64,000 nucleotides of DNA. Origin: Blastocystis sp. Blastoise (lineage: Eukaryota; Protista; Bigyra: Opalinata). Positions 8,423 through 40,458 of the stretch are shown here, piece by piece. Position numbers and translations under genes: made by a program. Each line of letters begins with the position of its first letter. Position 1 is the first letter of the stretch. The stretch lies in NCBI GenBank assembly GCA_039096225.1, contig JBBPEB010000028.1, positions 372,001 through 436,000 on the forward strand, written 5' to 3'. Below the pieces are notes generated by a model. That model did not search any database. It was given only the letters and a program-made list of their open reading frames with translations, and had not been told where the DNA came from.

Positions 8423-8459
<37 letters not shown>

Positions 8460-10205: not shown

Positions 10206-10381
10206 ATCAACTTCTATATTAAATAACTTAATTGTTATGAAAACAATAACACAAAAAACTAAATTCAACAGTTTTCAGTACTATTCATGCGGAAATGAGT
10301 CGTCATCTTATTGAGTGAAACGTTCTTAAAAGAATCTGTTTAATAAAGTTTAGAAGAGAATTTTTCAAGTAGATATTAAGA

Positions 10382-10953: not shown

Positions 10954-11004
<51 letters not shown>

Positions 11005-15610: not shown

Positions 15611-15697
15611 TTATCTATAATTTTGTTATTTTTCTTAAAATAATTATTTTTTATCATATTGCTTGATTATTGCTTGATATTTTTGTATTATTTTCAA

Positions 15698-16046
15698 ATG
15701 AGCAAACACATATTGATGTCTACTATACATGAATGTATTCAAAAGTTGGCGTGCTATGATGAGAAAACAAAATTATACACTTGTCCTATTTGCTCTATGA
15801 AACATCTTAGAAATTTTACACGTTATATTGATCATCTATCGAAAGAATATATTTATCATAAAGACACGCTATCTAGTACCAAAAATACATTATGTCAAAC
15901 TGCATATAAGTTACGTATTCATCACGTTAACTTAGACATTGAGCAGGTTGATCATCTAGGTGAATCTAATACTATGATACCAGTTGATAATGAAATGAGT
16001 GTTGATAGATTTTATGATGATCTATTGTGCTATTTTTTAACTACAA

Positions 16047-16085
<39 letters not shown>

Positions 16086-19000
16086 TACACCTTTTTCGCA
16101 AGTTGAGAACAAATACCTTATTCAAATGTTTAGTGATATTAACTCACAGTACAAGTTACCAAAAAGGCATTCGTTAAGTAACAGACACTTGGATAACACC
16201 TTCTATAAGATTTACGAAATAGTGGAAGAAAGGATTCGAAATGCAACTAGAGTATATCTATCATTTGATGGTATTAATATCCTTAATTTAGTTCATGTAG
16301 CGTACGGTGTCTCACGTACTTTAACTATTGTTGAGTTTGTTATTAACTTTTATAAAATAAAAATAACATCATAAAAACCGGAACACAATTCTGAAAATGA
16401 CCGTTAAAGAAATTTTTCGAAAACTCTAAATTTCTGGCTAAAAATCGCAAAAAACCTTTTTCGCACAAAATTTTAACCAAAATTATTGGATTATTTATAT
16501 TTTATCCAATATTTTTCATTTTTATAAAAACACATAATTTTCAATTTTTCATTTTTTGTTCGTTATTTTTATTTTTATCATATCTACTCACATTCTTCAT
16601 ATTTAATTTTATAAAAATAATGTTTACTGACGGAGTGTTCCTATAAATAGTTTTGACGGGTAAATTTGTTTATATTAAGAAATTGACAACATATCAATAC
16701 ACACATTACTAACTATAAACTCTAAAATGGTTTCGGTTGTTATGATAATGACCCCAACTACTCTAAAACAACAATAATTTCTCTAAATAACGACAAAAGA
16801 CAAACTGATATCCAACATATTCCTTTTAAATAAACTTATTTTAGCTTCAGTGTATTTATCTAACTCTATATCCGTCATAAATATGTTTTATATTTTAATA
16901 ATATATTTTAAAAAAGAAATATTTGTTTCCAAAATTTTTTCATTTTTGATACCCAATTTTGTGATCATCAGATTTCTGTCAATATTCAACGTATATCAAA
17001 AATTAAAACATATTTAGAAACTAGACAACCTAAAGGTCATCCGTTTTTCATATTTTTACTTAATATTTAATATTGACCGAAATATGTTAATTTATATGAA
17101 AAACATAAAAATGGAATTTTTCTAAAAAGAGTATATTTTGTGATTGTGATTTCTCAGTCAATATTTAATTAAATACAAAAGGTAAAGTTTATTTAGATAT
17201 AAGACAACCTAAATGTCATCTATTTTTGTCACTTTTTCAAAATATTAAAAAATGAAGTTACAGGGGACAATAGTTGAACTCAATAGAAAAAGGACGTTCG
17301 AAATTTTTATTAAAAATTTCCATTTGTTTTTTGTTTATACTCTCATCATTAATAATTTTATTAGATATTAGACTTTATATTTAATCACTACATATTAAAA
17401 AAAACATATTTTACAATTTTCTATTGTTTTTAAAAGACTCTGACAACAGATCACCAGACAATGTTAACTCAATAGACTCTTAAAACGTTTCGACTCGTGT
17501 TACGAATTATTGGTAAACACTGAACGTGACTTATTTACAAAAATTAAGTAAACATGTTGAACTGATACAGACAATGTTTGTTTTAAAAAGTTTATTATGG
17601 GTCTTAATAAGTGTTAAATGTCATAAATAGTGTTTAAATAAATTAATAAGTTTTTAATTGTCTTTAATTAGTGAAATAAATCGTTTAAAAAGAAGAAAGT
17701 ATTTTTGATACTATAGTTTATTTTGATATTTTCTCCATCAATATTAATTTTTAAAAAATAAATAAAACTTATATATAAACTAGACAACCTATAGTTTATA
17801 AATTTATAAAAATAATTTCTAAACATATAATAACTTTTGAGATAAAAAATTATATATGCAAAACATAAAAATTATTTTTTTTCAAAAAAGGGTATAGCTT
17901 ATATAATTAATTTCTCAGTCAATATTTAATTATTTTATATAATTTTAACAAATAAATACAGAGAATAAAACATATTAATTATATTATTTTTAATATTTAA
18001 AATTAATAAAAAAATGAGTTCAGTAGAGTCAATAGTATAACATGTTAAAAAACTGAAAAAAAAAAATCTTTTTTCTAAAAATTTTCCGAAAGTTGACAAA
18101 TCAAATTCATATTTGACAAATAATTTTTATATTTTTGTAAACTAGACTACATATTTATTGCATTTCTCAAAATAAATGTCAAAAAAAAGTTCGACGAGTG
18201 AATGAGCAAGTGGACATGTTGACTTATAATTTGTTATAAAATTCATAAGTGTGTTATAAACAACATGTTAAATCAAATATAGAAATATTGGCCTAAAAAC
18301 AAAAGTTTAACGCGTCGAAATGTTTTGAATTGTCTTTTTACATATCTTAAGTTAAGAGATTCAAGATAAATTTTATGAAATCAATAAATGTGACTTTCAT
18401 TATATATATTTGTTATAATAATGTTTGTAATGAAAGTGATTGAATATTTGGTAATAGTCCTGAAATGAACAAACTTTTATAAAAAGTATCACTATATTGC
18501 TGAAAAGCATTTCATATTTGTATATGTAATAAAAAAACGTTTAAAAAATGTTTTATTGTAAATATAACAGTCGATTCTTTTCAATTGAAGTAAATCTATT
18601 TAGAGATTCAAGCCAACTTTTAAAGAAACTATAATTAAAATGTGTGATAATGTTATTTTGAGACATTTTAGTTAAAATAAAAATAGTTTGTTGATTGAAT
18701 AGAATTTTGAAATGGTTGTTGACGTATTATGAGTTAATAATCATAATTAATAAATATATATATTTTCAATTATTTATAATAAGATATAAAAGTGTATAGG
18801 AATCTTTTAACTTTCGCAATTAATATATAAGATTTGTCACATGTGTGAGTAATTATTTTTTTTTATCATAAATAAGTGTTATACTAATAATAATTTGATT
18901 AGTGACGAAAATAGTCTAAGATAAAACTATTCAGTTGCTTTTAAAACATTCAGATGAGCAGAATTTTTTGTGATATTATTTAAAGCTGTCAATATAGTGT

Positions 19001-22000
19001 GTGATAGTTGTATCAAACAGTTTTATATGAATTAATCAATATTTAGTGACAAATAAAGGAATCAGAAGTGAAAATGAGTTATAATTACGAGTTTGTTTTT
19101 AAATATTCATTCATTTGATATTTGTTTTAATTCAATTATAATAAAAACATTTATAATACAGGCAAACAAATGGAATAAATTATTAATATCCTTAATTTAG
19201 TTCATGTAGCGTACGGTGTCTCACAGACTTTCACTATTCTTGACTTTGTTATTAACTTTTATAAAATAAAAATAACATCATAAAATCCGGAACACAATTC
19301 TGAAAATGACTGTTAAAGAAATTTTTCAAAAACTCTAAATTTCTGGCTAAAAATCGCAAAAAACCATTTTCGCACAAAATTTTAACCAAAATTATTGGAT
19401 TATTTTTATTTTATCCAATATTTTTCATTTTTATAAAAACACTTATTTTTCCATTTTCATTTTTTATTGTTTTCTTATTTTTCCTATATCACTTCACATA
19501 CTCTATATTTATTTTTATAAAATTGACTTTTATTGACGGGTTAGTCTTATAAATAGTTTTGACGGGTAAATTTGTTTATATTTACAACTTGACAACATAT
19601 CAATACACACATCACTAACTATAAACTCTAAAATGGTTTCAGTTGTTATGATACTGACCTCAACTACTCTGAAACCACAATAATTCCTTTAAATAACAAC
19701 AAAAGTCAAACTGATATCCGACACATTCCTTCTTTATAAATTTATTTGAGCTTTAATGTATTTATTTAACTCTGTATCCGTCATAAATATGTTTTATATT
19801 TTAATAATATGTTTTAATAAGAAAATATTTGATAATAGAAATTTTGATGTTTTGATAGTATAGTTTGTTATTCGTCTTTCTCCTTGAGTTTTGGGTATTT
19901 TTTAAAAATAAAAGTATAATTATAATTAAGATAAGCTATTGCAGATACATATTTTTTATTTTATCTAAATATTTAATATTGACTGAGAAACATTCATTTA
20001 TATGAAAAACATAAAAATGAAAATTTTCAAAAAAAGGGTATAGTTTGTTATTGTGATTTCTCAATCAATTCTTAATAAAATAAAAAAGTTAGAACATATT
20101 TAGAAACTAGACATGTCATAGCAGATACATATTTTTCATTTTTTTAATTAATTGAAAACTCAGGTGACAAGAGTCAATAGTTGAACTCAATAAAAAATGA
20201 CTTTCAAAAAATTTTCTTAAAAAGTTTTCATTTGTTTTTTGTTTATATTTTCATCATTAACAATTTTATTTGACATTAGACTTTATATTTAAAAACTATA
20301 TATCAAAATAAACATATTTTATAATTTTATTTTGTTTTTAAAAGACTGTGACAACAGATCACCAGACAATGTTAACTCAATAAACTCTTAAAACGTTTTA
20401 ATTAGTGTTTAGAATCATTCATGGACACTGAATATGATTTATTTGAAAAAGTTAGGACAACATGTTGAACTGATACAGACAATGTTTGTTCTAAAAAGTA
20501 AGTTATCAGTCTTACTAAGTTGTAAATATCATAAATATGCTTTAAATAAATAAATATGCTTTTAATTATCTTTAATTAGTGAAATAAGTCGTTTAAAAAG
20601 AAGAAAGCATTTTGGATACTATAGTTTATTTTGACAATTTCTCCATCAATATTAATTTTTAAAAAATAAATAAAACTTATATATAAACTAGACAACCTAT
20701 AGTTTATATATTTATAAAAATATTATCAAAATATTAAATAACTTTTGAGATAAAAAATTATATATGCAAAACATAAAAAAATTAATTTTTGAAAAAAGGG
20801 TATACTTTATAACATTAATTTCTCAGTCAATATTTAATTATTTAATATAATTTTAGCAAATAAATATAGAGAATAACACATATTAATAATATAAATTTTA
20901 ACATTTAAAATTAATTAAGAAATGAGTTCAGTAGAGTCAATAGTATAACATGTTAAAAAACTGAAAATTGAAAAATCATTTTTCTAAAAATTTTCCGAAA
21001 GTTGACAAATCAAATTCATATTTGACAATTAATTTTTACATATTTGAAAACTAGACATTATATGTATTGCATTTCTCAAAAAATTAGTCAAAAATAAGTT
21101 AGACGAGTATATATATATGCACATGTTGACTCATAATTTTGAAAAAAGTAGTTAAATATGTCCTAAACCACATATCAAAGCAATTCTATAAATATTATCA
21201 CTTTATAATGAGTTTAAAGGATAAAATAATTTTGAATTGTCTGTTTGACTGTCTTAAGTGAAGAGATTCAATACACTTTTTATAAAAATGAGTATTAGAG
21301 TGTTTAATGTTTATAATAATAAAAGAATTGTTTGAAATAAAGGTGGTTGTGTGTTTGACCAAAATGTTAAAATGAGTCTATTTTTCTAAAATGGTTACAA
21401 TAAGTATATATTGAGTGTTTTTAGAGTATTTTATATTAAAATCTACAATAAATAAACATTTTAAGTTGTTCAAAAAATTATTTTTTTAGAATTACAATAG
21501 TTAAGTCAAGAGATTCAAGTCACTTTTTATAATAATAATAAATAGACTTATTATAGAATATAAAATATTAAAAATTAGTTTAATTAAACATGGTTGACTG
21601 TTTGATAGGAGTGTTAAAATGGGTAAAAAGATTTTAATTGTTTCTAAAACTGTATAATACGTTTTTATGTCACTAAATACAAAATTATTATTGTTTAAAG
21701 AATGTTTTTTGTCTTTCAAAAGAACTCATTCTTTGTAATTGTGACTTAAAACAAAAGAGATTCAAGTTATTTTTTACAAATTAAAATAATAAATTAAATA
21801 TATATGTATATTAATATAAAATTCGTTTTAATAAAAGTGGATATGTGTATTTAAAAACGTTAAAATCTTTTAGAGTTTTTTAAAAATAACTTATTTGTTT
21901 TATAAACTATATTTTATGTATAATAGGTAAAGTTTCCAAAGTATTTAAATCTATTTAGTTATGAAATGGAATGTAATTTTTGGTTTATATTTAGTTTTTC

Positions 22001-25000
22001 GTTTCATTTAATGAAATGATTTTGATAACACTATAAAAATTGAATTAAACTTGAATTAATTAATTTTAAATAATGAAAAGATAATTTCTCTATAAATATT
22101 CTCTTTTACTTAAAACGAATAGATTCTATTAATGATAAATATTAAAATAAGACTCTAATTTTTTTGTTTATTATATAAAGTAATAAATATCTTTTAATTA
22201 TTAAGAGTACTTTTGTATTAATAATTCAAACTAAAATAAGTATAATAAAAGAAAAATTATAATATTTATCAAATAATATCAAGATATGATTACTATTTAT
22301 ATAATTAAACATTTATTAATTGAGAAAAGCTGTATAATAAAATTTCTAAAATATTTATATAATAGTATATATAAAAGGAAAGGATAAAATATAAAAAAAC
22401 AAATAGATATCAAAATTATTAATATCCTTAATTTAGTTCATGTAGCGTACGGTGTCTCACACACTTTCACTATTATTGACTTTGTTATTAACTTTTATAA
22501 AATAAAAATAACATCATAAAAACCGGAACACAATTCTAAAAATGACTGTTAAAGAAAATTTTCAAAAATTCTAAATTTCTGGCTAAAAAACGCAAAAAAC
22601 CATTTTCGCACAAAATTTTAACCAAAATTATTGGATTATTTTTATTTTATCCAATATTTTTCATTTTTATAAAAACACTTATTTTTCGTTTTTCATTTTT
22701 TATTGTTTTCTTATTTTTCCTATATCTATTCACATACTCTATATTTATTTTTATAAAATTGACTTTTATTGACGGGTTGGTCTTATAAATAGTTTTGACG
22801 GGTAAATTTGTTTATATTAAGAACTTGACAACATATCAATACACAGATCACTAACTTTAAACTCTAAAATGACTACATTCGTAATGTAAATGACTTTAAC
22901 TACTCTAAAACAACAATAATCCCTTTAAATAACGACAAAAGACAAACTGATATCCGACACATTCCTTCTTTATAAACTTATTTGAGTTTATTCAAGTTAT
23001 TTAGAATCAATACATGTCATAAGTATATCTTTTAGTTGTTTAAAAAGTTTTAATAAGAAAATATTTGATAATAGAAATTTTGATGTTTTGATAGTATAGT
23101 TTGTTATTCGTCTTTCTCCTTGAGTTTTGGGTATTTTTTAAAAATAAAAGTATAATTATAATTAAGATAAGCTATTGCAGATACATATTTTTTATTTTAT
23201 CTAAATATATAATATTGACTGAGAAACATTCATTTATATGAAAAACATAAAAATGAAAATTTTCAAAAAAAGGGTATAGTTTGTTATTGTGATTTCTCAA
23301 TCAATTCTTAATAAAATAAAAAAGTTTAAACATATTTAGAAACTAGACATGTCATAGCAGATACATATTTTTCATTTTTTTAATTAATTGAAAACTCAGG
23401 TGACAAGAGTCAATAGTTGAACTCAATAAAAAATGACTTTCAAAAAATTTTCTTAAAAAGTTTTCATTTGTTTTTTGTTTATATTTTCATCATTAACAAT
23501 TTTATTTGACATTTGACACTATATTTAAAAACTACATACCAAAATAAACATATTTTACAATTTTATTTTGTTTTTAAAAGACTTTGACAACAGATCACCA
23601 GACAATGTTAACTCAATAAACTCTTAAAACGTTTAGATTAGTGTTTAGAATCATTTATGGACACTGAATATGACTTATTTGAAAAAATTAAGACAACATG
23701 TTGAACTGATACTGACAATGTTTGCTTTAAAAAGTCAGTTATGAGTCATTATGAGTTGTATATGTCATAAATAAGCTTTAAATAAATAAATTTGTTTTTA
23801 ATTGTCTTTAATTAGTGAAATAAGTCGTTTAAAAAAAGAAAATGTTTTTGAGACTAAAATTTATTTTGACAATTTTTCCATCAATATTTATTTTTAAAAA
23901 ATAAATAAAACTTATTTATAAACTAGACAACCTATAGTATATATATTTATAAAAATTTTATCTAAATATAAAATAACTTTTGAGATAAAAAATTATATAT
24001 GCAAAACATAAAAAAATTAATTTTTGGAAAAAGGGTATACTTTATAACATTAATTTCTCAGTCAATATTTAATTATATTTAATAATTTTAATAAATTAAT
24101 ATAGAGAATAAAATATATTAACGATATAAATTTTAACATTTAAAATTAATTAAGAAATGAGTTCAGTAGAGTCAATAGTATAACATGTTAAAAAACTGAA
24201 AATTGAAAAATCGTTTTTCTAAAAATTTTCCGAAAGTTGACAAATCAAATTCATATTTGACAATTAATTTTTACATATTTGATAACTAGACCTTATATGT
24301 ATTGCATATCTCTAAAAAATAGTCAAAATTGAGTTTGACGAGTGTATGAGTATATGCACATGTTGACTCATAATTTTGAAAAAAGTAGTTCGATGTGTCC
24401 TAAATCACATATTAGGGCAATTCTGAAAATATTATCACTTTATAATGAGTTTAAAGGGTAAAATAATTTTGAATTGTCTGTTTGACTGTCTTAAGTTAAG
24501 AGATTCAATACACTTTTTGTAAAAATGAGTATTAGAGTGTTTAATGTTTATAATAATTAAAGAATTGTTTGAAATAAAGGTGGTTGTGTGTTTGACCAAA
24601 ATGTTAAAATGAGTCTATTTTTAAAAAATGGTTGTAATAAGTATGTATAGAGTGTTTTTAAATTGTTTTATATTAAAATCTACAATAAATAAACATTTTA
24701 AGTTGTTTAAAAATTTGATTCTTTAGAATTACAATAGTTAAGTCAAGAGATTCAAGTCACTTTTTATAATAATAAAAAATAGAGTCATAATAGAATATAG
24801 AATATTAAAAATTAGTCTAATTAAATGTGGTTGACTGTTTGATAGGAATGTTAAAATGGGTAAAAAGATTTTAATTGTTTCTAAAACAGTATAATACGTT
24901 TTTTTGTCACTAAATACAAAAATATTATAGTTTAAAGAATGTTTTTTGTCTTTCAAAAGAACTCATTTTTTGTAATTGTGACTTTAAATAAATGAAATTC

Positions 25001-28000: not shown

Positions 28001-28075
28001 ATGAATGATTCCTCAAATAAAAAACAGACTCAGACTACAGAAGATTTCAACAGTTGTGTAAATATACTCAATAAA

Positions 28076-28124
<49 letters not shown>

Positions 28125-31100
28125 TACATGCTAACATATTATACATTCTATATATTCTCTGTAAATATGTTTTTATATATAAGTCATTTATAGACTATGA
28201 TGAAACTGTAAATACTATAACGTTTGACAAAAGTACGTTGCTTTCTATTAGTGGTGTTCAACTAAATGAAGACTTTATTCAGGACTTGCTCCCATTAACA
28301 CTAGAAACATTATCAAAGTCGCTATCAGTTGTAAATTGCGGTAAATATATATGTTTTATGCATAAAATTTGATTTCTTTTATCATTATTTGAATATAATC
28401 TATAAAAACTTATGGAACGAAACAACGATATTATAAGGCGCGAAAGTTAAGTAACGAGAACGTAATCCCGTGATTATTCATCCTTATGATCTATACTATG
28501 TCTATTACTGTGATTATTCATCCTTATGATCTATACTATGTCTATTCCCGTGATTATTCATCCTTATGATCTATACTATGTCTATTCCCGTGATTATTCA
28601 TCCTTATGATCTATACTATGTCTATTACTGTGATTATTCATCCTTATGATCTATACTATGTCTATTACTGTGATTATTCATCCTTATGATCTATACTATG
28701 TCTATTCCTGTGATTATTCATCCTTATGATCTATACTATGTCTATTACTGTGATTATTCATCCTTATGATCTATACTATGTCTATTCCCGTGATTATTCA
28801 TCCTTATGATCTATACTATGTCTATTCCTGTGATTATTCATCCTTATGATCTATACTATGTCTATTACTGTGATTATTCATCCTTATGATCTATACTATG
28901 TCTATTCCTGTGATTATTCATCCTTATGATCTATACTATGTCTATTACTGTGATTATTCATCCTTATGATCTATACTATGTCTATTCCCGTGATTATTCA
29001 TCCTTATGATCTATACTATGTCTATTCCCGTGATTATTCATCCTTATGATCTATACTATGTCTATTCCTGTGATTATTCATCCTTATGATCTATACTATG
29101 TCTATTACTGTGATTATTCATCCTTATGATCTATACTATGTCTATTCCCGTGATTATTCATCCTTATGATCTATACTATGTCTATTACTGTGATTATTCA
29201 TCCTTATGATCTATACTATGTCTATTCCTGTGATTATTCATCCTTATGATCTATACTATGTCTATTACTGTGATTATTCATCCTTATGATCTATACTATG
29301 TCTATTCCCGTGATTATTCATCCTTATGATCTATACTATGTCTATTCCTGTGATTATTCATCCTTATGATCTATACTATGTCTATTCCTGTGATTATTCA
29401 TCCTTATGATCTATACTATGTCTATTCCCGTGATTATTCATCCTTATGATCTATACTATGTCTATTCCCGTGATTATTCATCCTTATGATCTATACTATG
29501 TCTATTCCCGTGATTATTCATCCTTATGATCTATACTATGTCTATTCCTGTGATTATTCATCCTTATGATCTATACTATGTCTATTCCTGTGATTATTCA
29601 TCCTTATGATCTATACTATGTCTATTACTGTGATTATTCATCCTTATGATCTATACTATGTCTATTACTGTGATTATTCATCCTTATGATCTATACTATG
29701 TCTATTCCTGTGATTATTCATCCTTATGATCTATACTATGTCTATTACTGTGATTATTCATCCTTATGATCTATACTATGTCTATTCCCGTGATTATTCA
29801 TCCTTATGATCTATACTATGTCTATTCCTGTGATTATTCATCCTTATGATCTATACTATGTCTATTCCTGTGATTATTCATCCTTATGATCTATACTATG
29901 TCTATTACTGTGATTATTCATCCTTATGATCTATACTATGTCTATTCCCGTGATTATTCATCCTTATGATCTATACTATGTCTATTCCCGTGATTATTCA
30001 TCCTTATGATCTATACTATGTCTATTCCTGTGATTATTCATCCTTATGATCTATACTATGTCTATTCCTGTGATTATTCATCCTTATGATCTATACTATG
30101 TCTATTACTGTGATTATTCATCCTTATGATCTATACTATGTCTATTCCTGTGATTATTCATCCTTATGATCTATACTATGTCTATTACTGTGATTATTCA
30201 TCCTTATGATCTATACTATGTCTATTCCCGTGATTATTCATCCTTATGATCTATACTATGTCTATTCCTGTGATTATTCATCCTTATGATCTATACTATG
30301 TCTATTACTGTGATTATTCATCCTTATGATCTATACTATGTCTATTACTGTGATTATTCATCCTTATGATCTATACTATGTCTATTCCCGTGATTATTCA
30401 TCCTTATGATCTATACTATGTCTATTACTGTGATTATTCATCCTTATGATCTATACTATGTCTATTCCCGTGATTATTCATCCTTATGATCTATACTATG
30501 TCTATTACTGTGATTATTCATCCTTATGATCTATACTATGTCTATTCCTGTGATTATTCATCCTTATGATCTATACTATGTCTATTACTGTGATTATTCA
30601 TCCTTATGATCTATACTATGTCTATTACTGTGATTATTCATCCTTATGATCTATACTATGTCTATTACTGTGATTATTCATCCTTATGATCTATACTATG
30701 TCTATTCCTGTGATTATTCATCCTTATGATCTATACTATGTCTATTACTGTGATTATTCATCCTTATGATCTATACTATGTCTATTCCCGTGATTATTCA
30801 TCCTTATGATCTATACTATGTCTATTCCTGTGATTATTCATCCTTATGATCTATACTATGTCTATTCCTGTGATTATTCATCCTTATGATCTATACTATG
30901 TCTATTACTGTGATTATTCATCCTTATGATCTATACTATGTCTATTCCCGTGATTATTCATCCTTATGATCTATACTATGTCTATTACTGTGATTATTCA
31001 TCCTTATGATCTATACTATGTCTATTCCCGTGATTATTCATCCTTATGATCTATACTATGTCTATTCCTGTGATTATTCATCCTTATGATCTATACTATG

Positions 31101-34100
31101 TCTATTACTGTGATTATTCATCCTTATGATCTATACTATGTCTATTACTGTGATTATTCATCCTTATGATCTATACTATGTCTATTCCCGTGATTATTCA
31201 TCCTTATGATCTATACTATGTCTATTACTGTGATTATTCATCCTTATGATCTATACTATGTCTATTCCCGTGATTATTCATCCTTATGATCTATACTATG
31301 TCTATTCCCGTGATTATTCATCCTTATGATCTATACTATGTCTATTCCTGTGATTATTCATCCTTATGATCTATACTATGTCTATTCCCGTGATTATTCA
31401 TCCTTATGATCTATACTATGTCTATTCCTGTGATTATTCATCCTTATGATCTATACTATGTCTATTCCCGTGATTATTCATCCTTATGATCTATACTATG
31501 TCTATTCCCGTGATTATTCATCCTTATGATCTATACTATGTCTATTACTGTGATTATTCATCCTTATGATCTATACTATGTCTATTCCCGTGATTATTCA
31601 TCCTTATGATCTATACTATGTCTATTCCCGTGATTATTCATCCTTATGATCTATACTATGTCTATTACTGTGATTATTCATCCTTATGATCTATACTATG
31701 TCTATTCCTGTGATTATTCATCCTTATGATCTATACTATGTCTATTACTGTGATTATTCATCCTTATGATCTATACTATGTCTATTACTGTGATTATTCA
31801 TCCTTATGATCTATACTATGTCTATTACTGTGATTATTCATCCTTATGATCTATACTATGTCTATTACTGTGATTATTCATCCTTATGATCTATACTATG
31901 TCTATTCCCGTGATTATTCATCCTTATGATCTATACTATGTCTATTCCCGTGATTATTCATCCTTATGATCTATACTATGTCTATTCCCGTGATTATTCA
32001 TCCTTATGATCTATACTATGTCTATTACTGTGATTCTATGTTCTCACGATTCTTTCATATTTATTAATTTAATATTTCTTTATTTCTATATTTTCTTATG
32101 TTTTATTCTCTTTTAATAGTTCACTAATATTTATTATTTGTAGAGTATTATTAATTTACATTATTTCCTTTTAGGTGCTTCCGATGGTCACAATAAATCT
32201 TCGAGAACGGAGTTGAAATTTACTAACTGTTCTTCAATAATTAATGTTAGAGCGAAAAGTGATTCAAAAGAAAACGAAAACTTTGAAAATCATACTATAC
32301 GCCATAAAAGGAAATCAAAACTTCAAGTGATATCAAAAATTTTAGCTTCGTGTTTAGATGATGATGATTCAGAATCTGACAGTATGTGATATTTTAGTTA
32401 TTTATGTTTTTCTTTATTTTTTACCATAATATTTTTATTTAATAGCTTATAATATACTTTAAAGATACAATTATGTGTTTTACATGCTTTATATATATAT
32501 ATATATATATCAGTTTATATGAACTATTTACTATATATATATATATTGTTTTCTTAATCTTATTCATACATTTCTTTACTCTTTAATAATGGTAATTATT
32601 TGTTGTTTTTATAGCTCCCTTTAAAACATATTATAAAAGTAGGAGAGAAAAAATGCCAAAAAACACTTTCATACATAAAAAAGAATTTATTAACTTTAAT
32701 AATAGGAATGATATAAATGATTATCATGACCAATGTGCTATTAGTAATGAGATTAGTTTTAGTGACGATCTTAACCATGAACAAAGCCAAATTGACGAAA
32801 ATGACAAAACAGCACATATTAGTGATACTAATTTCGATAACAATATACCAAAATTTATAGTAAACGAAAATAATACTTTGAACAGTAACTGCCTTGAAGA
32901 CAACACGAGTGAGTATACCCAATTCTTAGATATATATGATATTACTCAACATCAATCAGAAAATAGTGACAAAAATGTATCGACAATTGGTAATATTAAT
33001 AATCAAAATATGAATGACGACTCTGATCAAGTAATGTTGCAAGAATCATGTTTGGATGATTTTGAAACAAATAATAATAATATTACTTTTCATATGGAAG
33101 ACATAGACATAGATGTTGACAGCAGAATGCAAGACCATATAACGGAAAATAACGACAATTACGTAAATGAAAATCATAACATTTTCTTAAATGATTCAGA
33201 ACAATTTCAGATATTAAATGATCTTGATAATATAATGGTTGATACTAATACTGCTTCAAATATAACTAATGATGAAATATTATTACCAACAGAGGAAACT
33301 CATGATAATCGATCAAATGAAAATTTATTTACCATGTATACAATGTCTAATGAAAATAATCATGGTATATTTTGTTCTATTACTAAATTGCTTTTCATAA
33401 AGATATAATATAATTATATATTTAGAAACTGGTATCAGCTCTCAGGAATCAGAAGAAGACACAATAATAGCAATAATTAACCCATTACCAAATATTTTGT
33501 GTTCATCGAAACTAAGTATGCTATCTCAATCAATTAACATATATATTCACTTTTTATTTTTAATCCCCAAATATATAACTATTTTTTATATATAGGAAGC
33601 TCATATCAATTAATTGATGAAAATGATTATAAGTATGAATATTATGATTTGGGTAAAATGATATTTAAATGTCCATGTTGTAATGGTTTACATTTTGAAC
33701 ATGAACGTAATCGTTTTGTATGGACTATAAACTATGATACAACATTTTTTGAAGAACCATCAAATTCATATAATGACACAATAAATAATACAACAATATA
33801 TACAAAAAGAAGGAAACAATGGACACTTGACACAGAAGAGAATATTTTATTAAAGAATAGTCAGTATAGTGGTTGTTGTCGTAATGGAAAGGTACGTTTA
33901 GGTTCATTATCAGAGCCAGATATATCAATACAAAATTTATTGAATGATAATACAGATTCTTCAAAACAATTTAAGAAAGATATTCGTAGATATAATAATT
34001 CAATAGCTTTTGCTTCTATGTCATGTACTGATACACAAACAAGATTAGATAATAATGGAATATATTTCTATAAAGTACATGGAAATATATATCATTCTAT

Positions 34101-37100
34101 GGCAGATTTATATCCTCCTGAAGGTATTACTCCTAATTATAATCAAATATATATTTATGATCAAGAAGAAGCTTTTCAACTTCGATCAAATAATCAATAT
34201 TATGATAATTTGAATACAGAAATAATGAGAGTATTACATAATTCATTATTAAATAATGAATTAATGAATGCTTTTAAGACATTACATGAAGAAGTAACTA
34301 CTGCTACAACTAATAATAATAATCTTCATATATCACAAGTAGATGTTTCATTAAAATTCAAAACATTACATTCAGATGATCAAAGAAGATATAATACTCC
34401 TTCTGCTTCTCATGAAATAGCACTTATTGTTCCTATTAATTCTATGGAAACATTTCCTCATACTGAATTTAGATGTTATCCAAGAATTCATCTTAATAAT
34501 AATACAAATCATATGAATATGAATGAAGAAATAAGACAACATTTTACAAGAATGAAATATGATAATCCATTTTGTGATCCTATGGTTTATCCTATATTTT
34601 ATCCCACAGGAATTCCATTATTTATTCTTGCATCTAAAAGTGAGTTAAGAAGAAATCCTAATTATATTCCAAGAAGAAATAATAATATAGAAATACATTC
34701 TCAAATCAATTCAAATACAATAGAAAATACTAATATTCAAGTAGAACAAATAGAGAGAGAATCTAATAGAAATAGTAGATATAATAATAGAAATCAATTA
34801 TTAGATAATGAAGAAGATGAAATAGATAATGAGGATAGAGAGTCTTCAAGACAAACTCATGATGATTTTTCAAAATCAATTACTTTATTAGCTAATTATC
34901 AACAATTTAATAATGAAGGATATCCTATAGATTTAATAGGAAATCCTGTATATGAGAAATCATCTTTTACATTAAAGGATTTTTATTCTTTTCTTTGTTT
35001 TCCTAGATCATTTCCTAATAAGAATTATTTCTTATCAGGAGGAAAATTATTCTTACAATATATTGTAGATGCTTATTCTAAAATAGAAGAACAACGATTA
35101 TCATTTATAGAAATGAATCAATCAAAATTAAGAGCAGAATCTTATAATGTATTACGACAATATAATCAAAGAAGAAGAGAACAAGTAATAGATGAAGAAG
35201 TAGCAAATGGAATAGGAAAACCTATTATATTAAATAGTGGTTTTGTAGGAGGACCAAGATATATGAAAGGAGCTTATTTAGATGCAATGACAATAGTAAG
35301 ATATTATGGTAAACCAGATTTTTTTATTACTTTTACATGTAATCCAAAATGGAAAGAAATAGTAGATAATTTATATCCTAATCAAGAAGCATGGGAAAGA
35401 CCTGATTTGGTTTGTAGAGTATTTGCAATTAAATTGAAATATTTATATCATTTATTAAAAGATGAGAATGTATTTGGTAAAGCACAAGCTATTACTTATA
35501 CTGTTGAATTTCAAAAGAGAGGATTACCTCATGCTCATATCTTATTGAATGTTGAACAACAAGATAAAATACATGATATTAATGAACTTGATTCTATTAT
35601 ATGTGCTTATCTTCCTGATGAAGAAAAGAATCCTAGATTATTTAAAATAGTAAGTACAATGAATATACATGGTCCTCATGTATCTAATTCTCCATGTTTA
35701 GATTCTCATGGAATATGTAAGAAAGGATTTCCTAAACCATTTCAAGAATGTACTACAATTCCTAATGATTCTTATCCTTTATATTTTAGACCAAATGATG
35801 GAAGAAAAGTAGTATTTCATCGTAATAATGGTGATTTAGAAGCTACTAATGAATATGTTGTTCCATATAATCCATATTTATCACTCAAATTAGAAGCACA
35901 TATTAATGTTGAAGCAGTTTATAGTTTACATACAGTAAAATATCTATATAAATATACAACAAAAGGTCATGATTCAATGAGAGCAGAATTATCAGCTTCT
36001 TCAAATGAAACAAATAATAATGAAGTTAAACAATATTTAGATGCAAGATATATATCATCAACTGAAGCAGTTTGGAGAATATTAGGCTTTCCTATAGTAC
36101 AATCAAATATAGCTGTTCAAATATTATTGATTCATGATGAGAATGATAAGAATATAGTATATACAGATGGTTCAGAAGAACAAGCAGAAGAAATACAAGG
36201 AAATAAATTATCTATGTTAGAAGCATATTTCAAAGTAAATGATGATTTAAATAATCATTTATATGTTCCTACTTTAGAAGAACCAGAGTTTATGACATAT
36301 GATATGTTTCCTCAATATTATACATGGTGTAAAGGAGAACATATATGGAAACCAAGACAAAAGAATTCGAAGACACTTGGAAGAATACCTTATATAAATC
36401 CAACTAATAAAGAAGCATTTTGTTTAAAATTATTATTAACTCATGTAAATAGACCAACAAGTTTTGAATCATTAAGAATATATGATCGAGAATTACCTTA
36501 TCCAACTTATGAAGGAGTATGTATAGCAAGAGGATTATTAGATGATACTAATGAATATAGACATATATTAGATGAAGTAATGCATGATTGTCATCCTTCT
36601 CAATTACGATTAGTATTTGCTTTATTATTTGTATATTATAATATTACTGATAAAGCAATGGATTTATGGAATGAATTTAAATATGAAATGATTTCTGATA
36701 TATATTATCAATATACAATAGATCATTTTACTATAAATGAACGTATTAATCATTCTCTTTCAACTGATCCTGATATTATTGATCAAGATCCTATTGTAAT
36801 CAATTATTGTTATCCAAGAGCTTTATATAATATCAAAACATTAATAGAATCAAATGGAGGTAAATATACTAATATGCCTACTATTCAATATACTTCACAT
36901 TTTAATCCTAATAGTGGTGTTTCAACATTAGAATTTTATGATTTTGATGTTGCACATAGAGAAGCAGAAAGAAATTATCAAATGTTAAATAGAGAACAAA
37001 AAGAAATATTTGATAGAATTATGGTATCTGTTAATAATACTCAACCTCATAATAATAATATGTTCTTTATTGATGGTCCTGGTGGAACTGGAAAAACATT

Positions 37101-39163
37101 CTTATATAATACTTTGATCAAGATGATTCGTACAAGAGAAAAATCTGTATTAGCTGTTGCATTCACAGGAATAGCAGCTACTTTATTATCAGGAGGAAGT
37201 ACTTCTCATTCTGTATTTGGATTACCACTTGATCTGAATGAAATGTCTATTTCACATATAACAAGAAGTAGTGCAAAAGCAAATGATTTAAGAAAAGCTG
37301 CTATTATTATTTGGGATGAAGCACCTATGGCTTCTATTTATGCTTTAGAAGTTCTTGATAATTTATTACATGATTTATTTAGTTCAATAGATTCTGAAGA
37401 TCCATGTCTTCAATATCCTTTTGTTGGTAAAACTATTGTTTTAGGTGGAGATTTTAGACAATGTTTACCAGTAGTTAAAAATGGAAATGAATCATCTACT
37501 GTTGGTGTATGTTTGAAAAGATTTAAATATTGGAATAATTTTATACAATGTCATTTAGTTCAGAATATGAGAGCAGATAGAGATGCTTTAGATTTTAAAG
37601 AATGGTTAATGAAAGTAGGAAATGGTGAACGATTAAATAATGAATCTGATTTGAATGATAATATTGTAGAAATACCTTCACAATGTATAAGTACAGAAAA
37701 TTTATATAAAGAGATATGGGAGAATATACTTCATAATAGAAATATTTTGTCAGAACAACATAGAAAAGATTTATCTGAGAATTGTATTTTATGTTGTACG
37801 AATGAAGATACTTTTGGTATAAATGAGAAAGTATTAGATTTAATACCTTCTTCAGAATCAGAAAAAATATATTATAGTTTTGATACTTTAGAAGATGAAA
37901 TAGTTAATGATTCTGAAAGAGCTGCTTATTCTCCTGAATTTCTTAATACTCTTCTTCCTCAAGGATTTCCTCCTCATAAATTAAGATTAAGAAAAGGATG
38001 TATTATTATGTTATTGAGAAATCTTAATATAAAGAAAGGTTTATGTAATGGAACAAGATTAGTTGTTCTTGAAACATTAAATAATGTTATTCGTGCTCAA
38101 TTATTAAATAAACCAGATAATTTATTACCTGGTGAAGATATTGTATTTATTCCAAGAATTAGTTTAATTACTTCAGATGATTCACTTCCTACTAAGATGA
38201 GAAGAAAACAATTTCCTGTTCGATTAGCTTTTGCTATGACTATTAATAAATCACAAGGTCAAACATTTAAAAATGTTGGATTATATTTAAAGAGACCTGT
38301 ATTTAGTCATGGTCAGTTATATGTTGCTTTTAGTAGAGTTCGTTCTTTTAATGGTTTACATATTTATGCTGAAAATTGTAATAATAATAATCAAGGACAT
38401 CTTAGTAAAGACTATCCTAATAAGGTATTTACGACTAATTGTATTTTTGATGGAGTTTTAAATTAGTTATTGTTTTATTTATTGTTATTCTATTGTTTGA
38501 TTACTTTTATATTTTATTCTTTGTTTACATAATTTTTTTTTATTTGTTATTTTTCGCTTTTCAATTTTTATTTGTTGTTTTTAAAAGTTAAATATAAAAT
38601 ATTCTATTGTTTTGTTAAACTTATATACCAAAAACTAAAACTAGATATTCTAAAAATAAAACTCAAGCGTAGGCCTGCGTAGGCAGGCCGTGAAACGCTT
38701 GTATATATTATTATATTATTATATTATTATATTTTTATAATATTATATTATTAAAATATTATATTATTATAATATTATATTATTATATTATTATATTATT
38801 ATATTATTATATTATTATATTATTATATTATTATATTATTATATTATTATATTATTATATTATTATATTATTACAGGTACAACTAATATAAATCAAGAGA
38901 AATTTCTAAATGTTGTTGCAATTATAGAACATAAGCCATATTTGTATTGCATATATAATGTTACATATTGTGGTGAGACATCAGATTCAATTGCATATGT
39001 TATATATGACTGTATGCTAAGAATAGGTGTGAATAAAGTCAAGGGAATAGTGTCTGATAATTGTGCCGCTAATATATCAAGTCGTGAAAAACTTATTGAA
39101 AAAATCAGAAACGCTCAGAATCAATTAAGAAATAATAGTTCACAGATACCACAATATGAACCA

Positions 39164-39194
<31 letters not shown>

Positions 39195-40361
39195 ATTGCT
39201 TTCATTATTTATATTAATTTATTTATACATATCGTTATTAGTTAAATTATTTATATATATGTAGACACCAAAACTGATGATATGTCTAATGAAAATATAC
39301 TGCCATTAGTTTCTTGTCATGATTCTTTCTGTAATAATATTAACGAATTGTATTTTTTTGGATGTGCTTCACATATGGGAGAGCTGTTACTAGGTGACTT
39401 TATTAGTTCTGAAGACTTTCCTAGACACTATTATTCCCCAATGAATATAGTTAATAAAGTTAATGCTATTTCTATATATTTTAAATATCATGTTGCTGAT
39501 AGAGTTGAATTATGTATTGAAGCTGGTCATAACTATTGTGATAATACTCCTAAATTGTATTGCCCGACCAGATGGTGGTCAGAGTACTCTTCATTAAAAT
39601 GGCTACTTGATCATAAAGATCAATTGCAAAATTATGGATCCAAACATAAAGAAGAAAAAAATAAAGATTTTATTATTAGTCTAAACGATAATTCATTTTG
39701 GAAGTCTTGTGTTTCTATATTTGATATTCTAGTTATATGTAAAAATTCTGTTGAAAAGCTTGAAGCTAATGGATCTTCAATTTCAGATGTCTACTTTTAT
39801 TATAAACAGTTTATACATGTTAGTAATGAATCTATGTATAAGGAAATATTTGATAGGTGTTTATCCAAAAGAAAATACTTTTATACTCACCAATTGTACA
39901 TTTTGGCATATTACCTTAATATTCAACATAAAAATGAAATAATAAATAATCCAGATGATGTGCAAGCTATAATGGAATATTTACAAGAATCAGATAATAG
40001 AGAGTTGTATTCATCATTTCTTAATTATGCACATAATGATGGAGTTTTCATACAAAATCAAATTATCAACTGCCTAAATTATAATAACAATAAGATGTAC
40101 TGGCAGACTGTAAATTTCTTTGAGAAGAGCTTGTCTTCTCTAGCATTGCTACTTGATGATGCTCCTTCGTCGAGTGGTTTTTCCGAGAGAGTATGGTCAC
40201 AGTTACTTCTTGTTCAAACTAAGCTTAGAAACCGTTTAAGTTTCAGTAAAACTGCAAAAATATTATTCATAAGATGTAATCTTCCATATGTTGATTCTTC
40301 TGAGTCTTCATTCATGAACAGTGATAATATCGATATTGATGAGCTTTTTAATCCCGAATAG
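15698..40361 (+). CDS. hAT transposase, 4 exons (15698-16046, 16085-16270, 38877-39167, 39265-40361), 640 aa
   Basis: BED-like CPIC...HL...H; PFSQVEN; catalytic D in LSFDG|TTN spanning the large intron; VSDNCAAN; CASH; TRWWS; SSGFSERVWS and RNRLS dimerisation region. Exons total 1923 nt with no internal stop. Confidence 0.88.
22419..25396 (+). mobile_element. Shorter non-autonomous Helitron (2978 bp) nested in the 19183-26381 copy
   Basis: Same 5' terminus at 22419; hairpin and CTTG end at 25396; its flanks rejoin to match the uninterrupted sequence in the minus-strand copy. Confidence 0.88.
25360..25396 (+). terminator. Helitron 3' terminal hairpin (rolling-circle termination signal)
   Basis: CAAGCGT-A-GGCTGGC-GTA-GCCAGTC-GTGAA-ACGCTTG. 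Confidence 0.85.
25705..25966. repeat. (GAAATA)n hexanucleotide repeat inside a non-autonomous Helitron
   Basis: About 43 units; equivalent (TATTTC)n tract at about 40900-41175 in the inverted copy. Confidence 0.95.
26345..26381 (+). terminator. Helitron 3' terminal hairpin
   Basis: 37-mer identical to 25360-25396. Confidence 0.85.
26559..33648 (+). CDS. Putative upstream exons of the RepHel gene (low-complexity N/D/S/E-rich extension, up to about 685 aa)
   Basis: Phase-1 exons 26559-26583, 26674-27087, 27142-27189, 27235-27282, 27503-27538, 27651-27689, 27778-27813, 27915-28076, 28194-28340, 32175-32381, 32615-33364, 33426-33515, 33596- join in frame with RepHel. One candidate exon (27358-27424, 67 nt) breaks the frame unless skipped. 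Confidence 0.6.
28471..32030. repeat. Minisatellite: 89 x 40 bp, TGATTATTCATCCTTATGATCTATACTATGTCTATT[ACT|CCT|CCC]G
   Basis: Exact 40-bp period; only two positions vary; lies in the predicted intron 28341-32174. Confidence 0.97.
33649..38466 (+). CDS. Helitron RepHel protein (HUH Rep + Pif1-family SF1 helicase), main exon
   Basis: N-terminal LGKM..CPCC..HF..E...CC; Rep motifs PDFFITFTCNPKW, VEFQKRGLPHAHILL, KYLYKYTTKG; helicase motifs DGPGGTGKT, IWDEAPM, GGDFRQCLPV, GLCNGTRL, QFPVRLAFAMTINKSQGQT, HGQLYVAFSRV. No AP-endonuclease domain, so canonical Helitron1-like. Confidence 0.97.
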   Translation: MGKMIFKCPCCNGLHFEHERNRFVWTINYDTTFFEEPSNSYNDTINNTTIYTKRRKQWTLDTEENILLKNSQYSGCCRNGKVRLGSLSEPDISIQNLLNDNTDSSKQFKKDIRRYNNSIAFASMSCTDTQTRLDNNGIYFYKVHGNIYHSMADLYPPEGITPNYNQIYIYDQEEAFQLRSNNQYYDNLNTEIMRVLHNSLLNNELMNAFKTLHEEVTTATTNNNNLHISQVDVSLKFKTLHSDDQRRYNTPSASHEIALIVPINSMETFPHTEFRCYPRIHLNNNTNHMNMNEEIRQHFTRMKYDNPFCDPMVYPIFYPTGIPLFILASKSELRRNPNYIPRRNNNIEIHSQINSNTIENTNIQVEQIERESNRNSRYNNRNQLLDNEEDEIDNEDRESSRQTHDDFSKSITLLANYQQFNNEGYPIDLIGNPVYEKSSFTLKDFYSFLCFPRSFPNKNYFLSGGKLFLQYIVDAYSKIEEQRLSFIEMNQSKLRAESYNVLRQYNQRRREQVIDEEVANGIGKPIILNSGFVGGPRYMKGAYLDAMTIVRYYGKPDFFITFTCNPKWKEIVDNLYPNQEAWERPDLVCRVFAIKLKYLYHLLKDENVFGKAQAITYTVEFQKRGLPHAHILLNVEQQDKIHDINELDSIICAYLPDEEKNPRLFKIVSTMNIHGPHVSNSPCLDSHGICKKGFPKPFQECTTIPNDSYPLYFRPNDGRKVVFHRNNGDLEATNEYVVPYNPYLSLKLEAHINVEAVYSLHTVKYLYKYTTKGHDSMRAELSASSNETNNNEVKQYLDARYISSTEAVWRILGFPIVQSNIAVQILLIHDENDKNIVYTDGSEEQAEEIQGNKLSMLEAYFKVNDDLNNHLYVPTLEEPEFMTYDMFPQYYTWCKGEHIWKPRQKNSKTLGRIPYINPTNKEAFCLKLLLTHVNRPTSFESLRIYDRELPYPTYEGVCIARGLLDDTNEYRHILDEVMHDCHPSQLRLVFALLFVYYNITDKAMDLWNEFKYEMISDIYYQYTIDHFTINERINHSLSTDPDIIDQDPIVINYCYPRALYNIKTLIESNGGKYTNMPTIQYTSHFNPNSGVSTLEFYDFDVAHREAERNYQMLNREQKEIFDRIMVSVNNTQPHNNNMFFIDGPGGTGKTFLYNTLIKMIRTREKSVLAVAFTGIAATLLSGGSTSHSVFGLPLDLNEMSISHITRSSAKANDLRKAAIIIWDEAPMASIYALEVLDNLLHDLFSSIDSEDPCLQYPFVGKTIVLGGDFRQCLPVVKNGNESSTVGVCLKRFKYWNNFIQCHLVQNMRADRDALDFKEWLMKVGNGERLNNESDLNDNIVEIPSQCISTENLYKEIWENILHNRNILSEQHRKDLSENCILCCTNEDTFGINEKVLDLIPSSESEKIYYSFDTLEDEIVNDSERAAYSPEFLNTLLPQGFPPHKLRLRKGCIIMLLRNLNIKKGLCNGTRLVVLETLNNVIRAQLLNKPDNLLPGEDIVFIPRISLITSDDSLPTKMRRKQFPVRLAFAMTINKSQGQTFKNVGLYLKRPVFSHGQLYVAFSRVRSFNGLHIYAENCNNNNQGHLSKDYPNKVFTTNCIFDGVLN
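38664..38701 (+). terminator. Helitron 3' terminal hairpin, autonomous variant
   Basis: CAAGCGT-A-GGCCTGC-GTAG-GCAGGCC-GTGAA-ACGCTTG, about 200 bp after the RepHel stop. Confidence 0.87.
38702..38873. repeat. (TTATATTA)n 8-bp repeat; remainder of the original hAT intron 2
   Basis: Lies between the Helitron 3' end and the acceptor ttacAG at 38876. Confidence 0.85.
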
Positions 40362-40458
40362 ACAATATTTAATAATACTCTTAACTTTCCATATAAATAT
40401 TCTCCCAATTCTTATTTTATTTTATTTTATTTTTCATTATTTATGTAATAAATGTATA

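What the first reader, a model, noticed from the sequence alone, without database searches (positions are those of the whole stretch)
15698..40361. Intact hAT transposase split by a 22.6-kb intron carrying an autonomous Helitron stack
Seen: exon 2 ends ...TTT GAT G|gta at 16270 and exon 3 resumes ttacag|GT ACA ACT AAT at 38877, rebuilding the catalytic LSFDGTTN motif. The four exons give an uninterrupted 640-aa ORF with D, D, E, CxxH and W motifs. The Helitron landed 3 nt inside a roughly 180-nt intron and left both splice sites intact. Other introns in the window are tens to hundreds of nt, except the 3.8-kb array intron. Inference: a cut-and-paste element with both ends and a potentially functional transposase carries a complete rolling-circle element as intronic cargo, a composite that could move by two mechanisms. 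The Helitron gene is co-oriented, so chimeric hAT(BED)-RepHel splicing is frame-compatible because all these junctions are phase 1.
Basis: partly seen in the sequence, partly recalled or inferred. Interest (0 to 1): 0.85.

Follow-up and report, generated by a model that had tools for sequence, protein, structure and literature searches.

The report
Helitron nest inside a hAT transposon
A very young 2.8-kb hAT transposon of a tortoise-gut Blastocystis has taken a 22.4-kb three-level nest of Helitrons into one transposase intron and a fourth Helitron behind its stop codon; its reading frame is still perfect, but the public gene models show the gene cut in two and its back half spliced onto the Helitron's gene.

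Summary
Four exons (15698-16046, 16085-16270, 38877-39167, 39265-40361) give 640 codons, and each exon translation is an exact piece of the public 640-aa protein P0126 from a compact copy of the same element. The window is Blastocystis sp. 'Blastoise', GCA_039096225.1, contig JBBPEB010000028.1. The hAT element spans 15498-44951. Three Helitron-free copies (two with perfect 8-bp target duplications) supply exact empty sites. The insert 16274-38701 sits 3 nt inside a 178-nt intron. It is not a tandem stack but a nest: a 2,978-bp Helitron inside a 4,221-bp one inside a 15,229-bp RepHel-coding one. A fourth Helitron (40459-44698, minus strand) lies in the 3' UTR. Nothing shows that the 22.6-kb intron is spliced, its acceptor is weak, and 57 better acceptor-like sites lie inside it. 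The composite was seen only once. This is a well-resolved but ordinary nested-transposon case. One odd side observation: nearly all introns of these transposon genes are phase 1.

The parts
15498..44951 (+). Whole hAT element (29,454 bp; 2,786 bp without the Helitrons), TAGAGATGG...CCAACACTA
   Evidence: Homology to the Helitron-free copies L001 9801-12617 and L007 5801-8572 begins and ends here.
15489..15497 (.). Left copy of the flanking direct repeat GAAGACAGT (right copy at 44952-44960); 9 bp here, against perfect 8-bp duplications in L001 (ACTGACTT) and L007 (AAAACTTA)
44952..44960 (.). Right copy of the flanking direct repeat GAAGACAGT
15698..16046 (+). hAT exon 1 (zinc-finger-like CPIC...H...H N-terminus)
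   Evidence: only a weak Zn_ribbon_16 hit and no zf-BED hit
16085..16270 (+). hAT exon 2, ends ...LSFD G| (first catalytic Asp, D178)
16271..38876 (+). hAT intron 2 as it now stands (22,606 nt; 178 nt in the compact copy L001)
16274..19182 (+). Outer Helitron Z, 5' part (starts TTAATATCC)
   Evidence: 5' end motif; 5' module 83-87% identical to other copies
19183..22418 (+). Middle non-autonomous Helitron Y, 5' part
22419..25396 (+). Innermost non-autonomous Helitron X (2,978 bp, own 5' end and 3' hairpin end)
   Evidence: Ends. The empty site is contiguous in the L008 copy, 60/60 and 60/60.
25397..26381 (+). Helitron Y, 3' part with hairpin terminus (Y total 4,221 bp, same type as the 4,240-bp element D)
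26382..38701 (+). Outer Helitron Z, 3' part: RepHel gene and 3' hairpin terminus ...GTGAAACGCTTG (Z total 15,229 bp)
26559..38466 (+). RepHel gene: 14 exons in GenBank model WA158_001692; main exon 33596-38466 is 98% identical to paralogs P0003/P0004; own stop at 38464-38466
28466..32035 (.). 40-bp x 89 tandem array inside the 3,834-nt RepHel intron 28341-32174; absent from the paralogous Helitrons
38441..38876 (+). Intron of the annotated chimera: a donor 26 nt before the RepHel stop joined to the hAT intron-2 acceptor
38877..39167 (+). hAT exon 3 (second catalytic Asp, D239)
39265..40361 (+). hAT exon 4 (CxxH, W379, E583, dimerisation region) with stop codon
40459..44698 (-). Fourth Helitron (D, 4,240 bp, non-autonomous, antisense) in the hAT 3' UTR, 97 nt after the stop codon (which ends at 40361) and 253 bp from the 3' end of the element
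   Evidence: Empty site in L001 and L007; ends
15698..16374 (+). GenBank model WA158_001691 (P0124, 212 aa): exons 1-2, then read-through of the 16270 donor into the Helitron up to TAA

Best explanation
Shown: this is one of at least four copies of a recently active 2.8-kb hAT transposon in tortoise Blastocystis. After it landed between an eIF3g gene and a downstream gene, Helitrons hit it twice, each at an A^T site in TA-rich sequence. The first hit is a 22,428-bp unit that entered transposase intron 2 after its third base. That unit is an autonomous 15.2-kb Helitron, which contains a 4.2-kb non-autonomous Helitron, which contains a 3.0-kb one. The second hit is a 4.2-kb non-autonomous Helitron that entered the 3' UTR in antisense. 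Coding sequence, terminal inverted repeats and GT/AG signals were all spared, so the conceptual 640-aa transposase is intact. Inferred: the gene no longer works as one unit. Transcripts from the hAT promoter mostly fail to reach the weak exon-3 acceptor 22.6 kb away and end as a truncated N-terminal product. Transcripts of the co-oriented RepHel gene run past its stop and capture hAT exons 3-4. Because every intron involved is phase 1, that capture stays in frame. The composite would then be a functionally non-autonomous hAT. It could still be moved in trans by the intact compact copy (P0126, locus L007), and its Helitrons keep their own ends.
For: Identity of the locus: L006 equals window 5698-26374 at 100%. 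hAT membership: a profile of 40 relatives matches Hermes transposase at E = 9e-29 over nearly its full length, aligning the D, D, CxxH, W and E motifs; D178, D239, C309 and H312 are invariant; target duplications are 8 bp. Empty sites for both Helitron hits. Nest structure: three 5' ends are followed by three 3' hairpin ends, and the empty site of X is proven 60/60 + 60/60. Youth: only two substitutions separate this copy from L007, apart from microsatellite lengths. Split expression: P0124 is exons 1-2 plus read-through. P0138 maps as 16 exons, from RepHel 26559-38440 to hAT 38877-40358. The annotation pipeline required at least 3 junction reads and favoured strictly RNA-supported introns (PMC12129017). 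Splicing handicap: 67 mapped introns of these genes measure 34-451 nt, apart from the 3,834-nt array intron. The donor falls from 9.9 to 6.4 bits, the acceptor scores 3.0 bits against a 10th percentile of 5.4, and 57 better same-strand acceptor-like sites lie inside the intron. A trans source exists: intact P0126 at L007.
Against: I could not look at any RNA data. GenBank models are predictions, and the RNA support for these particular junctions is inferred from the pipeline's rules, not seen. The 3,834-nt array intron in the same model shows that this organism may splice multi-kb introns. The exon-2 donor still scores within the normal range (20th of 67 known donors), so some correct splicing cannot be excluded. 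The splice-site matrix was trained on only 64 introns, all from transposon genes.
Confidence: 0.7

Rival explanations
1. One reading: the 22.6-kb interval is removed as a genuine intron, so this copy still makes the full 640-aa transposase and is an autonomous hAT carrying Helitron cargo.
For: GT and AG are kept, the phase is preserved, and the ORF is identical to P0126. The donor remains in the normal score range. A 3.8-kb intron is annotated in the same region.
Against: The intron would be about 50 times longer than the longest ordinary intron mapped here. Its acceptor is weak, with many competitors and a co-oriented 14-exon gene inside. The annotation joins neither exon 2 to exon 3 nor exon 2 to any Helitron exon.
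Confidence: 0.15
2. The RepHel-hAT chimera is a real, translated fusion protein with a function of its own (regulator or new transposase), not just splicing noise.
For: In-frame 2,749-aa model WA158_001692. The pipeline demanded junction support.
Against: The hAT part lacks exon 1-2, so it lacks the N-terminal DNA-binding region and the first catalytic Asp, D178. The event is very young and found at a single locus. Other RepHel copies end at their own stop.
Confidence: 0.1
3. Assembly artefact: repeats were mis-joined in a Nanopore/Flye assembly, so the composite does not exist as drawn.
For: The isolate was sequenced on R9 Nanopore and the region is repeat-rich. An A7/A8 homopolymer difference between copies may itself be a sequencing error.
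Against: All four outer junctions are clean transposon ends at A^T sites. They restore the paralogous empty sites to the base, the intron remainder is exactly 178 nt, and the element is flanked by a matching direct repeat. Mis-joins fall inside shared sequence, not at element termini.
Confidence: 0.04

Closest known systems
Nested transposon insertions ('Russian doll' nests, classically in maize intergenic DNA) and transposon insertions in introns
   Same: Elements are inserted into elements, each with clean ends and recoverable empty sites. The host gene's exons are spared but its transcription unit is disturbed.
   Different: Here the host gene is itself a transposase gene. The nest has four levels (X in Y in Z in hAT) in a 33-Mb protist genome with normally short introns. 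All partners are DNA transposons of two mechanistic classes.
Hermes / Ac-type hAT transposons
   Same: 8-bp target duplication; short imperfect terminal repeats starting TAG; DDE transposase with CxxH and W in an insertion domain; C-terminal dimerisation region. The family profile matches Hermes at E = 9e-29.
   Different: About 21-29% identity to the relatives aligned outside Blastocystis. There is roughly a 50-residue extra loop between the second Asp and CxxH. The protein itself gets no Pfam Dimer_Tnp_hAT or zf-BED hit. It has three phase-1 introns.
Canonical Helitrons (rolling-circle, e.g. Helraiser, maize Helitrons that yield chimeric transcripts)
   Same: RepHel with HUH (RGLPHAHILL) and a PIF1 helicase. 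Insertion at A^T without target duplication. No terminal inverted repeats. A 3' hairpin, non-autonomous partners and chimeric transcripts with neighbouring exons.
   Different: The termini are 5'-TT...CTTG-3' rather than TC...CTRR. The hairpin's outer stem reaches the very last base. The RepHel gene has a long, many-exon, copy-specific N-terminal region.
Host-transposase fusion genes formed by splicing into transposase exons
   Same: An upstream gene's donor is spliced to a transposase acceptor, giving an in-frame fusion.
   Different: The upstream partner is another transposon's gene. The fusion is single-locus, very young and not shown to be translated.

Membership tests
hAT superfamily | 8-bp target-site duplication | tested here: met
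   L001 ACTGACTT and L007 AAAACTTA are perfect 8-bp duplications. The window copy has a 9-bp direct repeat, GAAGACAGT, i.e. 8 plus 1.
hAT superfamily | Short terminal inverted repeats with the YARNG start | tested here: met
   5' TAGAGATGGAAC and reverse complement of the 3' end TAGTGTTGGTAG: imperfect, with 8 of 12 positions matching.
hAT superfamily | DDE catalytic triad, with CxxH and W in the insertion domain | tested here: met
   D178, D239, C309 and H312 are invariant; W379 and E583 are nearly invariant in 40 relatives. The profile aligns these motifs with those of Hermes, E = 9e-29.
hAT superfamily | C-terminal hAT dimerisation domain (PF05699) | tested here: inconclusive
   P0126 and exon 4 get no Pfam hit. 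However, 36 of 40 relatives do, and the region aligns with the Hermes C-terminus.
hAT superfamily | N-terminal BED zinc finger | tested here: inconclusive
   Only a weak Zn_ribbon_16 hit (E = 2e-4). zf-BED was found in 3 of 40 relatives, and not in this protein.
Helitron (canonical) | RepHel protein: HUH Rep domain plus PIF1-like helicase | tested here: met
   Helitron_like_N 1e-55, PIF1 4e-61, Pif1_2B 1e-18. HAH motif and Walker A motif were read directly.
Helitron (canonical) | Insertion between A and T without target duplication | tested here: met
   Three events have empty sites: Z in hAT (GGTA^TATAT), D in hAT, and X in Y. One base of ambiguity allows T^A instead. Other copies lack empty sites, and two of their 5' flanks do not end in A.
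Helitron (canonical) | Termini 5'-TC and CTRR-3' | tested here: not met
   All copies start TTAATATCC and end ...AACGCTTG, so this is a terminal variant.
Helitron (canonical) | 3' subterminal hairpin; no terminal inverted repeats | tested here: met
   Hairpins of -10.6 to -14.4 kcal/mol, z-scores -4 to -5, with compensatory differences between Z and X/Y/D. The match of the 5' end against the reverse-complemented 3' end is no better than shuffles.
Functional spliceosomal intron (the 22.6-kb interval) | GT...AG boundaries and preserved phase | tested here: met
Functional spliceosomal intron (the 22.6-kb interval) | Length and signal strength within the range used by this genome | tested here: not met
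   Ordinary introns mapped here measure 34-451 nt (one of 3,834 nt). The acceptor scores 3.0 bits, below the 10th percentile.
Functional spliceosomal intron (the 22.6-kb interval) | Spliced transcripts observed | not testable with these tools
   No read data were available. The GenBank models do not contain this junction for this locus.

The most novel reading that the evidence does not exclude
The RepHel-to-hAT chimeric mRNA is really made. The almost exclusive use of phase-1 introns by the transposon genes of this genome (hAT, RepHel N-terminal regions) would then be a general design or by-product that keeps any exon combination between nested transposons in frame. That would be a ready route to new fusion transposases, caught here at its first step.
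Probability: 0.15. Interest if true: 0.75.

Novelty: new member of a known kind. Interest (0 to 1): 0.42.

Why it matters
Transposons of Blastocystis have hardly been described. This locus and its paralogs give base-exact ends, target sites and empty sites for one hAT family and one Helitron family that look active now: the copies differ by two substitutions. The locus is also a clean natural example of how an insertion that spares every codon and splice dinucleotide can still dismantle a gene and create a transposon-transposon fusion model. It also warns that the two GenBank gene models here are products of the insertion. It does not reveal a new mechanism.

Tried and rejected
1. Tandem 'stack' of 3'-truncated Helitron heads, by unequal crossing-over or read-through. 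I held this until one search showed three 5' ends followed by three 3' ends, and proved the inner empty site. It is a nest.

2. Helitron2/Helentron type with a T^T target and asymmetric terminal repeats. Rejected by the empty sites (A^T) and by the lack of any terminal inverted repeat.

3. Termini read from copy-to-copy alignment alone (TATTAAT...GTATA). These were two to four bases too wide because the targets are TA-rich. The empty sites corrected them.

4. Phase-1 introns as a genome-wide rule. Rejected. Host genes with a unique single-intron solution are phase 1, 0 and 2, and a parsimonious reconstruction of 16 host genes gives 28:25:22. A first score-maximising reconstruction over-split genes and was discarded.

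5. Single-sequence searches were weak. Pfam on exon 4 found nothing, and P0126 against PDB sequences found nothing. The family profile was needed.

6. Search for an uninterrupted Z-type Helitron to prove the Y-in-Z empty site. The other RepHel copies (L003, L004, L005, L008/9) share only the 2.2-kb head and the last 5.15 kb, so this level of the nest rests on the pattern of ends only.

7. The second hAT family (P0002) also has a copy split by a Helitron (P0127/P0130/P0129). That insertion lies in a coding exon, inside yet another element, so it is an independent event and not a copy of this composite.

8. The viral, metagenome and prokaryote contig collections were not scanned, because they would not hold this eukaryote.

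The exons were searched by reference, and whole-length searches used the public protein P0126.
Full report
**Source of the window**

The window has about 22% G+C. Locus L006, fetched through protein P0124, equals window 5698-26374 at 100% identity. The window is therefore contig JBBPEB010000028.1 of GCA_039096225.1, 'Blastocystis sp. Blastoise'. This appears to be the Russian-tortoise isolate Rus-B of Lind et al. 2025 (PMC12129017), which is listed there with 33 contigs, 33.3 Mb and 23% GC. It was sequenced on Nanopore R9 with Illumina polishing. It is not human sequence.

**Checking the observation**

- The exons are 15698-16046, 16085-16270, 38877-39167 and 39265-40361. That is 1923 nt, or 640 codons plus a stop, and every junction is phase 1.
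Each exon was handled by reference.
- The four in-frame translations are exact substrings of the public 640-aa protein P0126, at residues 1, 118, 180 and 277. P0126 was then used for whole-length analyses.

**It is a hAT transposase**

- A library-wide search with P0126 finds 656 relatives.
- In an alignment of 40 of them, D178, D239, C309 and H312 are invariant. T377-R378-W379 and E583-R584 are nearly invariant.
- All 40 carry DUF659 and 36 carry the hAT dimerisation domain.
- The profile matches Hermes transposase at E = 9e-29 over almost its whole length, motif for motif.
- The protein alone gives only a sub-threshold DUF659 hit (29.4 bits, below Pfam's 34.7-bit cut-off), and its paralog P0002 gives a weak Hermes hit.
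- A BED finger is not demonstrated.

**The element and its other copies**

Helitron-free copies lie at three other loci.

| Copy | Coordinates | State |
|---|---|---|
| L001 | 9801-12617 | compact, extra A in an A-run |
| L007 | 5801-8572 | compact, intact, encodes P0126 |
| L010 | from the equivalent of window 15840 | 5'-truncated, one-base indel in the exon 3-3'UTR segment |

- These copies delimit the window element as 15498-44951, TAGAG...CACTA.
- The target duplications differ: ACTGACTT (L001), AAAACTTA (L007), and a 9-bp GAAGACAGT repeat in the window.
- All four exons are identical in nucleotide sequence to L001, except for the extra A in L001 (A8 against A7 at 39655-39661).
- That extra base explains why the annotated P0001 skips 41 residues, including CPTRWW. 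P0123 (L010) has the same skip, and L010 shows a single one-base indel in that segment, so it most likely carries the same extra A.
- Against L007, the window copy differs by two substitutions (39902, synonymous; 44931) plus microsatellite lengths.
- The family is therefore very young. It has one intact compact copy, one intact but split copy (this one) and two damaged copies.

**The Helitrons**

- The compact copies give exact empty sites. Bases 16274-38701 (22,428 bp) sit in GGTA^TATAT, after the third base of a 178-nt intron. Bases 40459-44698 (4,240 bp, minus strand) sit at an A^T site 97 nt after the stop codon.
- All copies start TTAATATCC and end ...GTGAAACGCTTG, within a strong hairpin. 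They have no terminal inverted repeats.
- I first read the interior as tandem repeats. A scan for termini then showed 5' ends at 16274, 19183 and 22419, followed by 3' ends at 25396, 26381 and 38701. That is the signature of nesting.
- The 60 nt to the left of 22419 and the 60 nt to the right of 25396 are contiguous and identical in another copy (L008 8336-8455). X (2,978 bp) is therefore inserted in Y (3,236 + 985 = 4,221 bp), which is of the same type as D.
- That Y lies inside Z (2,909 + 12,320 = 15,229 bp) follows from the pattern of ends and an A^T site only. Other RepHel copies share just the 2.2-kb head and the last 5.15 kb with Z.
- Y enters Z 177 bp upstream of the annotated RepHel start codon.
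- Z's RepHel main exon is intact and 98% identical to its paralogs. It has HUH and Walker A motifs.
- Whether the nest was built in place or arrived as one 22.4-kb unit cannot be decided. Given how little the hAT copies have diverged, a single arrival is the more economical reading.

**What the gene now does**

GenBank has two models here.

- WA158_001691 (P0124, 212 aa) is exons 1-2 followed by translation straight through the 16270 donor into the Helitron.
- WA158_001692 (P0138, 2,749 aa) maps as 16 exons. There are fourteen RepHel exons from 26559 to 38440. Then a 436-nt intron runs from a donor 26 nt before the RepHel stop to the hAT intron-2 acceptor. hAT exons 3 and 4 follow.
- The annotation pipeline required at least three reads per junction and favoured transcripts with strictly RNA-supported introns. 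I could not see the reads myself.
- The chimera lacks the hAT N-terminus and D178.

Splice-site scores come from a matrix built on 64 mapped introns.

- The exon-2 donor drops from 9.9 to 6.4 bits, which is still ordinary.
- The intron-2 acceptor (…TTACAG) scores 3.0 bits, below the 10th percentile of 5.4.
- 57 better same-strand acceptor-like sites lie inside the 22.6 kb. The eight nearest all lead to a stop within 18 codons.
- Ordinary introns in these genes measure 34-451 nt.

I therefore think split expression is the main outcome (inferred, not shown). The copy probably depends on the L007 transposase if it moves at all.

- Frame compatibility of hAT and Helitron exons is true by construction, because every junction is phase 1. 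The only modelled chimera, however, runs the other way.
- Reads across 16270|38877 cannot be assigned to this locus, because the compact copies produce the same junction. Only copy-specific long cDNA (A7 plus T39902) can settle the question.
- The three other copies found are Helitron-free. A Helitron in a copy of the related hAT-2 family is an independent insertion at a different site. Nothing indicates that the composite has moved.

**Side observation: intron phase**

- 15 of 15 introns in P0138 and 51 of 53 in five paralogous transposon gene models are phase 1.
- Host genes are mixed. Unique single-intron solutions are phase 1, 0 and 2. A parsimonious reconstruction gives 28:25:22.
- The host-gene reconstructions are my own inference from gene boundaries and product lengths, not published exon tables.
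- I have no explanation for this bias.

**Verdict**

The structure is real and now resolved to the base. It is a four-level nested transposon with an intact but probably unusable split transposase gene. That makes it a new and tidy instance of a known phenomenon, not a new kind of element.

Noticed in passing
window 26559-40358; L001, L002, L003, L004, L005 gene models: Nearly all introns of the transposon genes are phase 1: 15/15 in WA158_001692 and 51/53 in five paralogous models. Host genes nearby show mixed phases. Many of these introns are little more than G(TA)nG or TA-rich microsatellites. No explanation found.
   Followed up: partly
window 28466-32035: A 40-bp unit repeated 89 times at 97% identity fills a 3,834-nt annotated intron of this RepHel copy. 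The paralogous Helitrons in L003 and L005 have no such array.
   Followed up: partly
L001 11560 and L010 (equivalent of window 39655-39661): L001 carries A8 instead of A7, a frameshift that the annotators bridged with a 124-nt 'intron' removing the CPTRWW motif. L010's model has the same skip and the locus shows a one-base indel in that segment. This may be a real inherited defect or a Nanopore homopolymer error.
   Followed up: partly
L008 10909-L009 ~9280 (contig JBBPEB010000002.1): A copy of a second hAT family (60% protein identity, TIR TAGAGATGAT, TSD TTCATTTC) is split into two annotated genes by about 16 kb. That insert holds an L003-type autonomous Helitron nested in another element, which begins CTAGGGTCACGCCGCAGG (a GC-rich hairpin next to CTAG). 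A 4.2-kb non-autonomous Helitron lies 470 bp upstream.
   Followed up: partly
L003 672-4594 and L010 3355-7270: The same pair of intronless ORFs (542 aa on the plus strand, 311 aa on the minus strand, no Pfam hit on record) lies upstream of a Helitron in L003 and upstream of the 5'-truncated hAT in L010. It may be yet another mobile element.
   Followed up: no
L007 8809-12822: A 790-aa gene without Pfam hits next to the intact hAT copy also reconstructs with almost only phase-1 introns, like the transposon genes.
   Followed up: no
window 25705-25967 and 40873-41189: An (AAATAG)n microsatellite of 44-53 units lies in the tail of the non-autonomous Helitrons Y and D.
   Followed up: no
window 38664-38701 versus 26344-26381, 25359-25396, 40459-40496: The inner stem of the Helitron 3' hairpin differs between the autonomous element (GGCCTGC/GCAGGCC) and the non-autonomous ones (GCTGGC/GCCAGT), with pairing kept. 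This suggests selection on the structure.
   Followed up: partly
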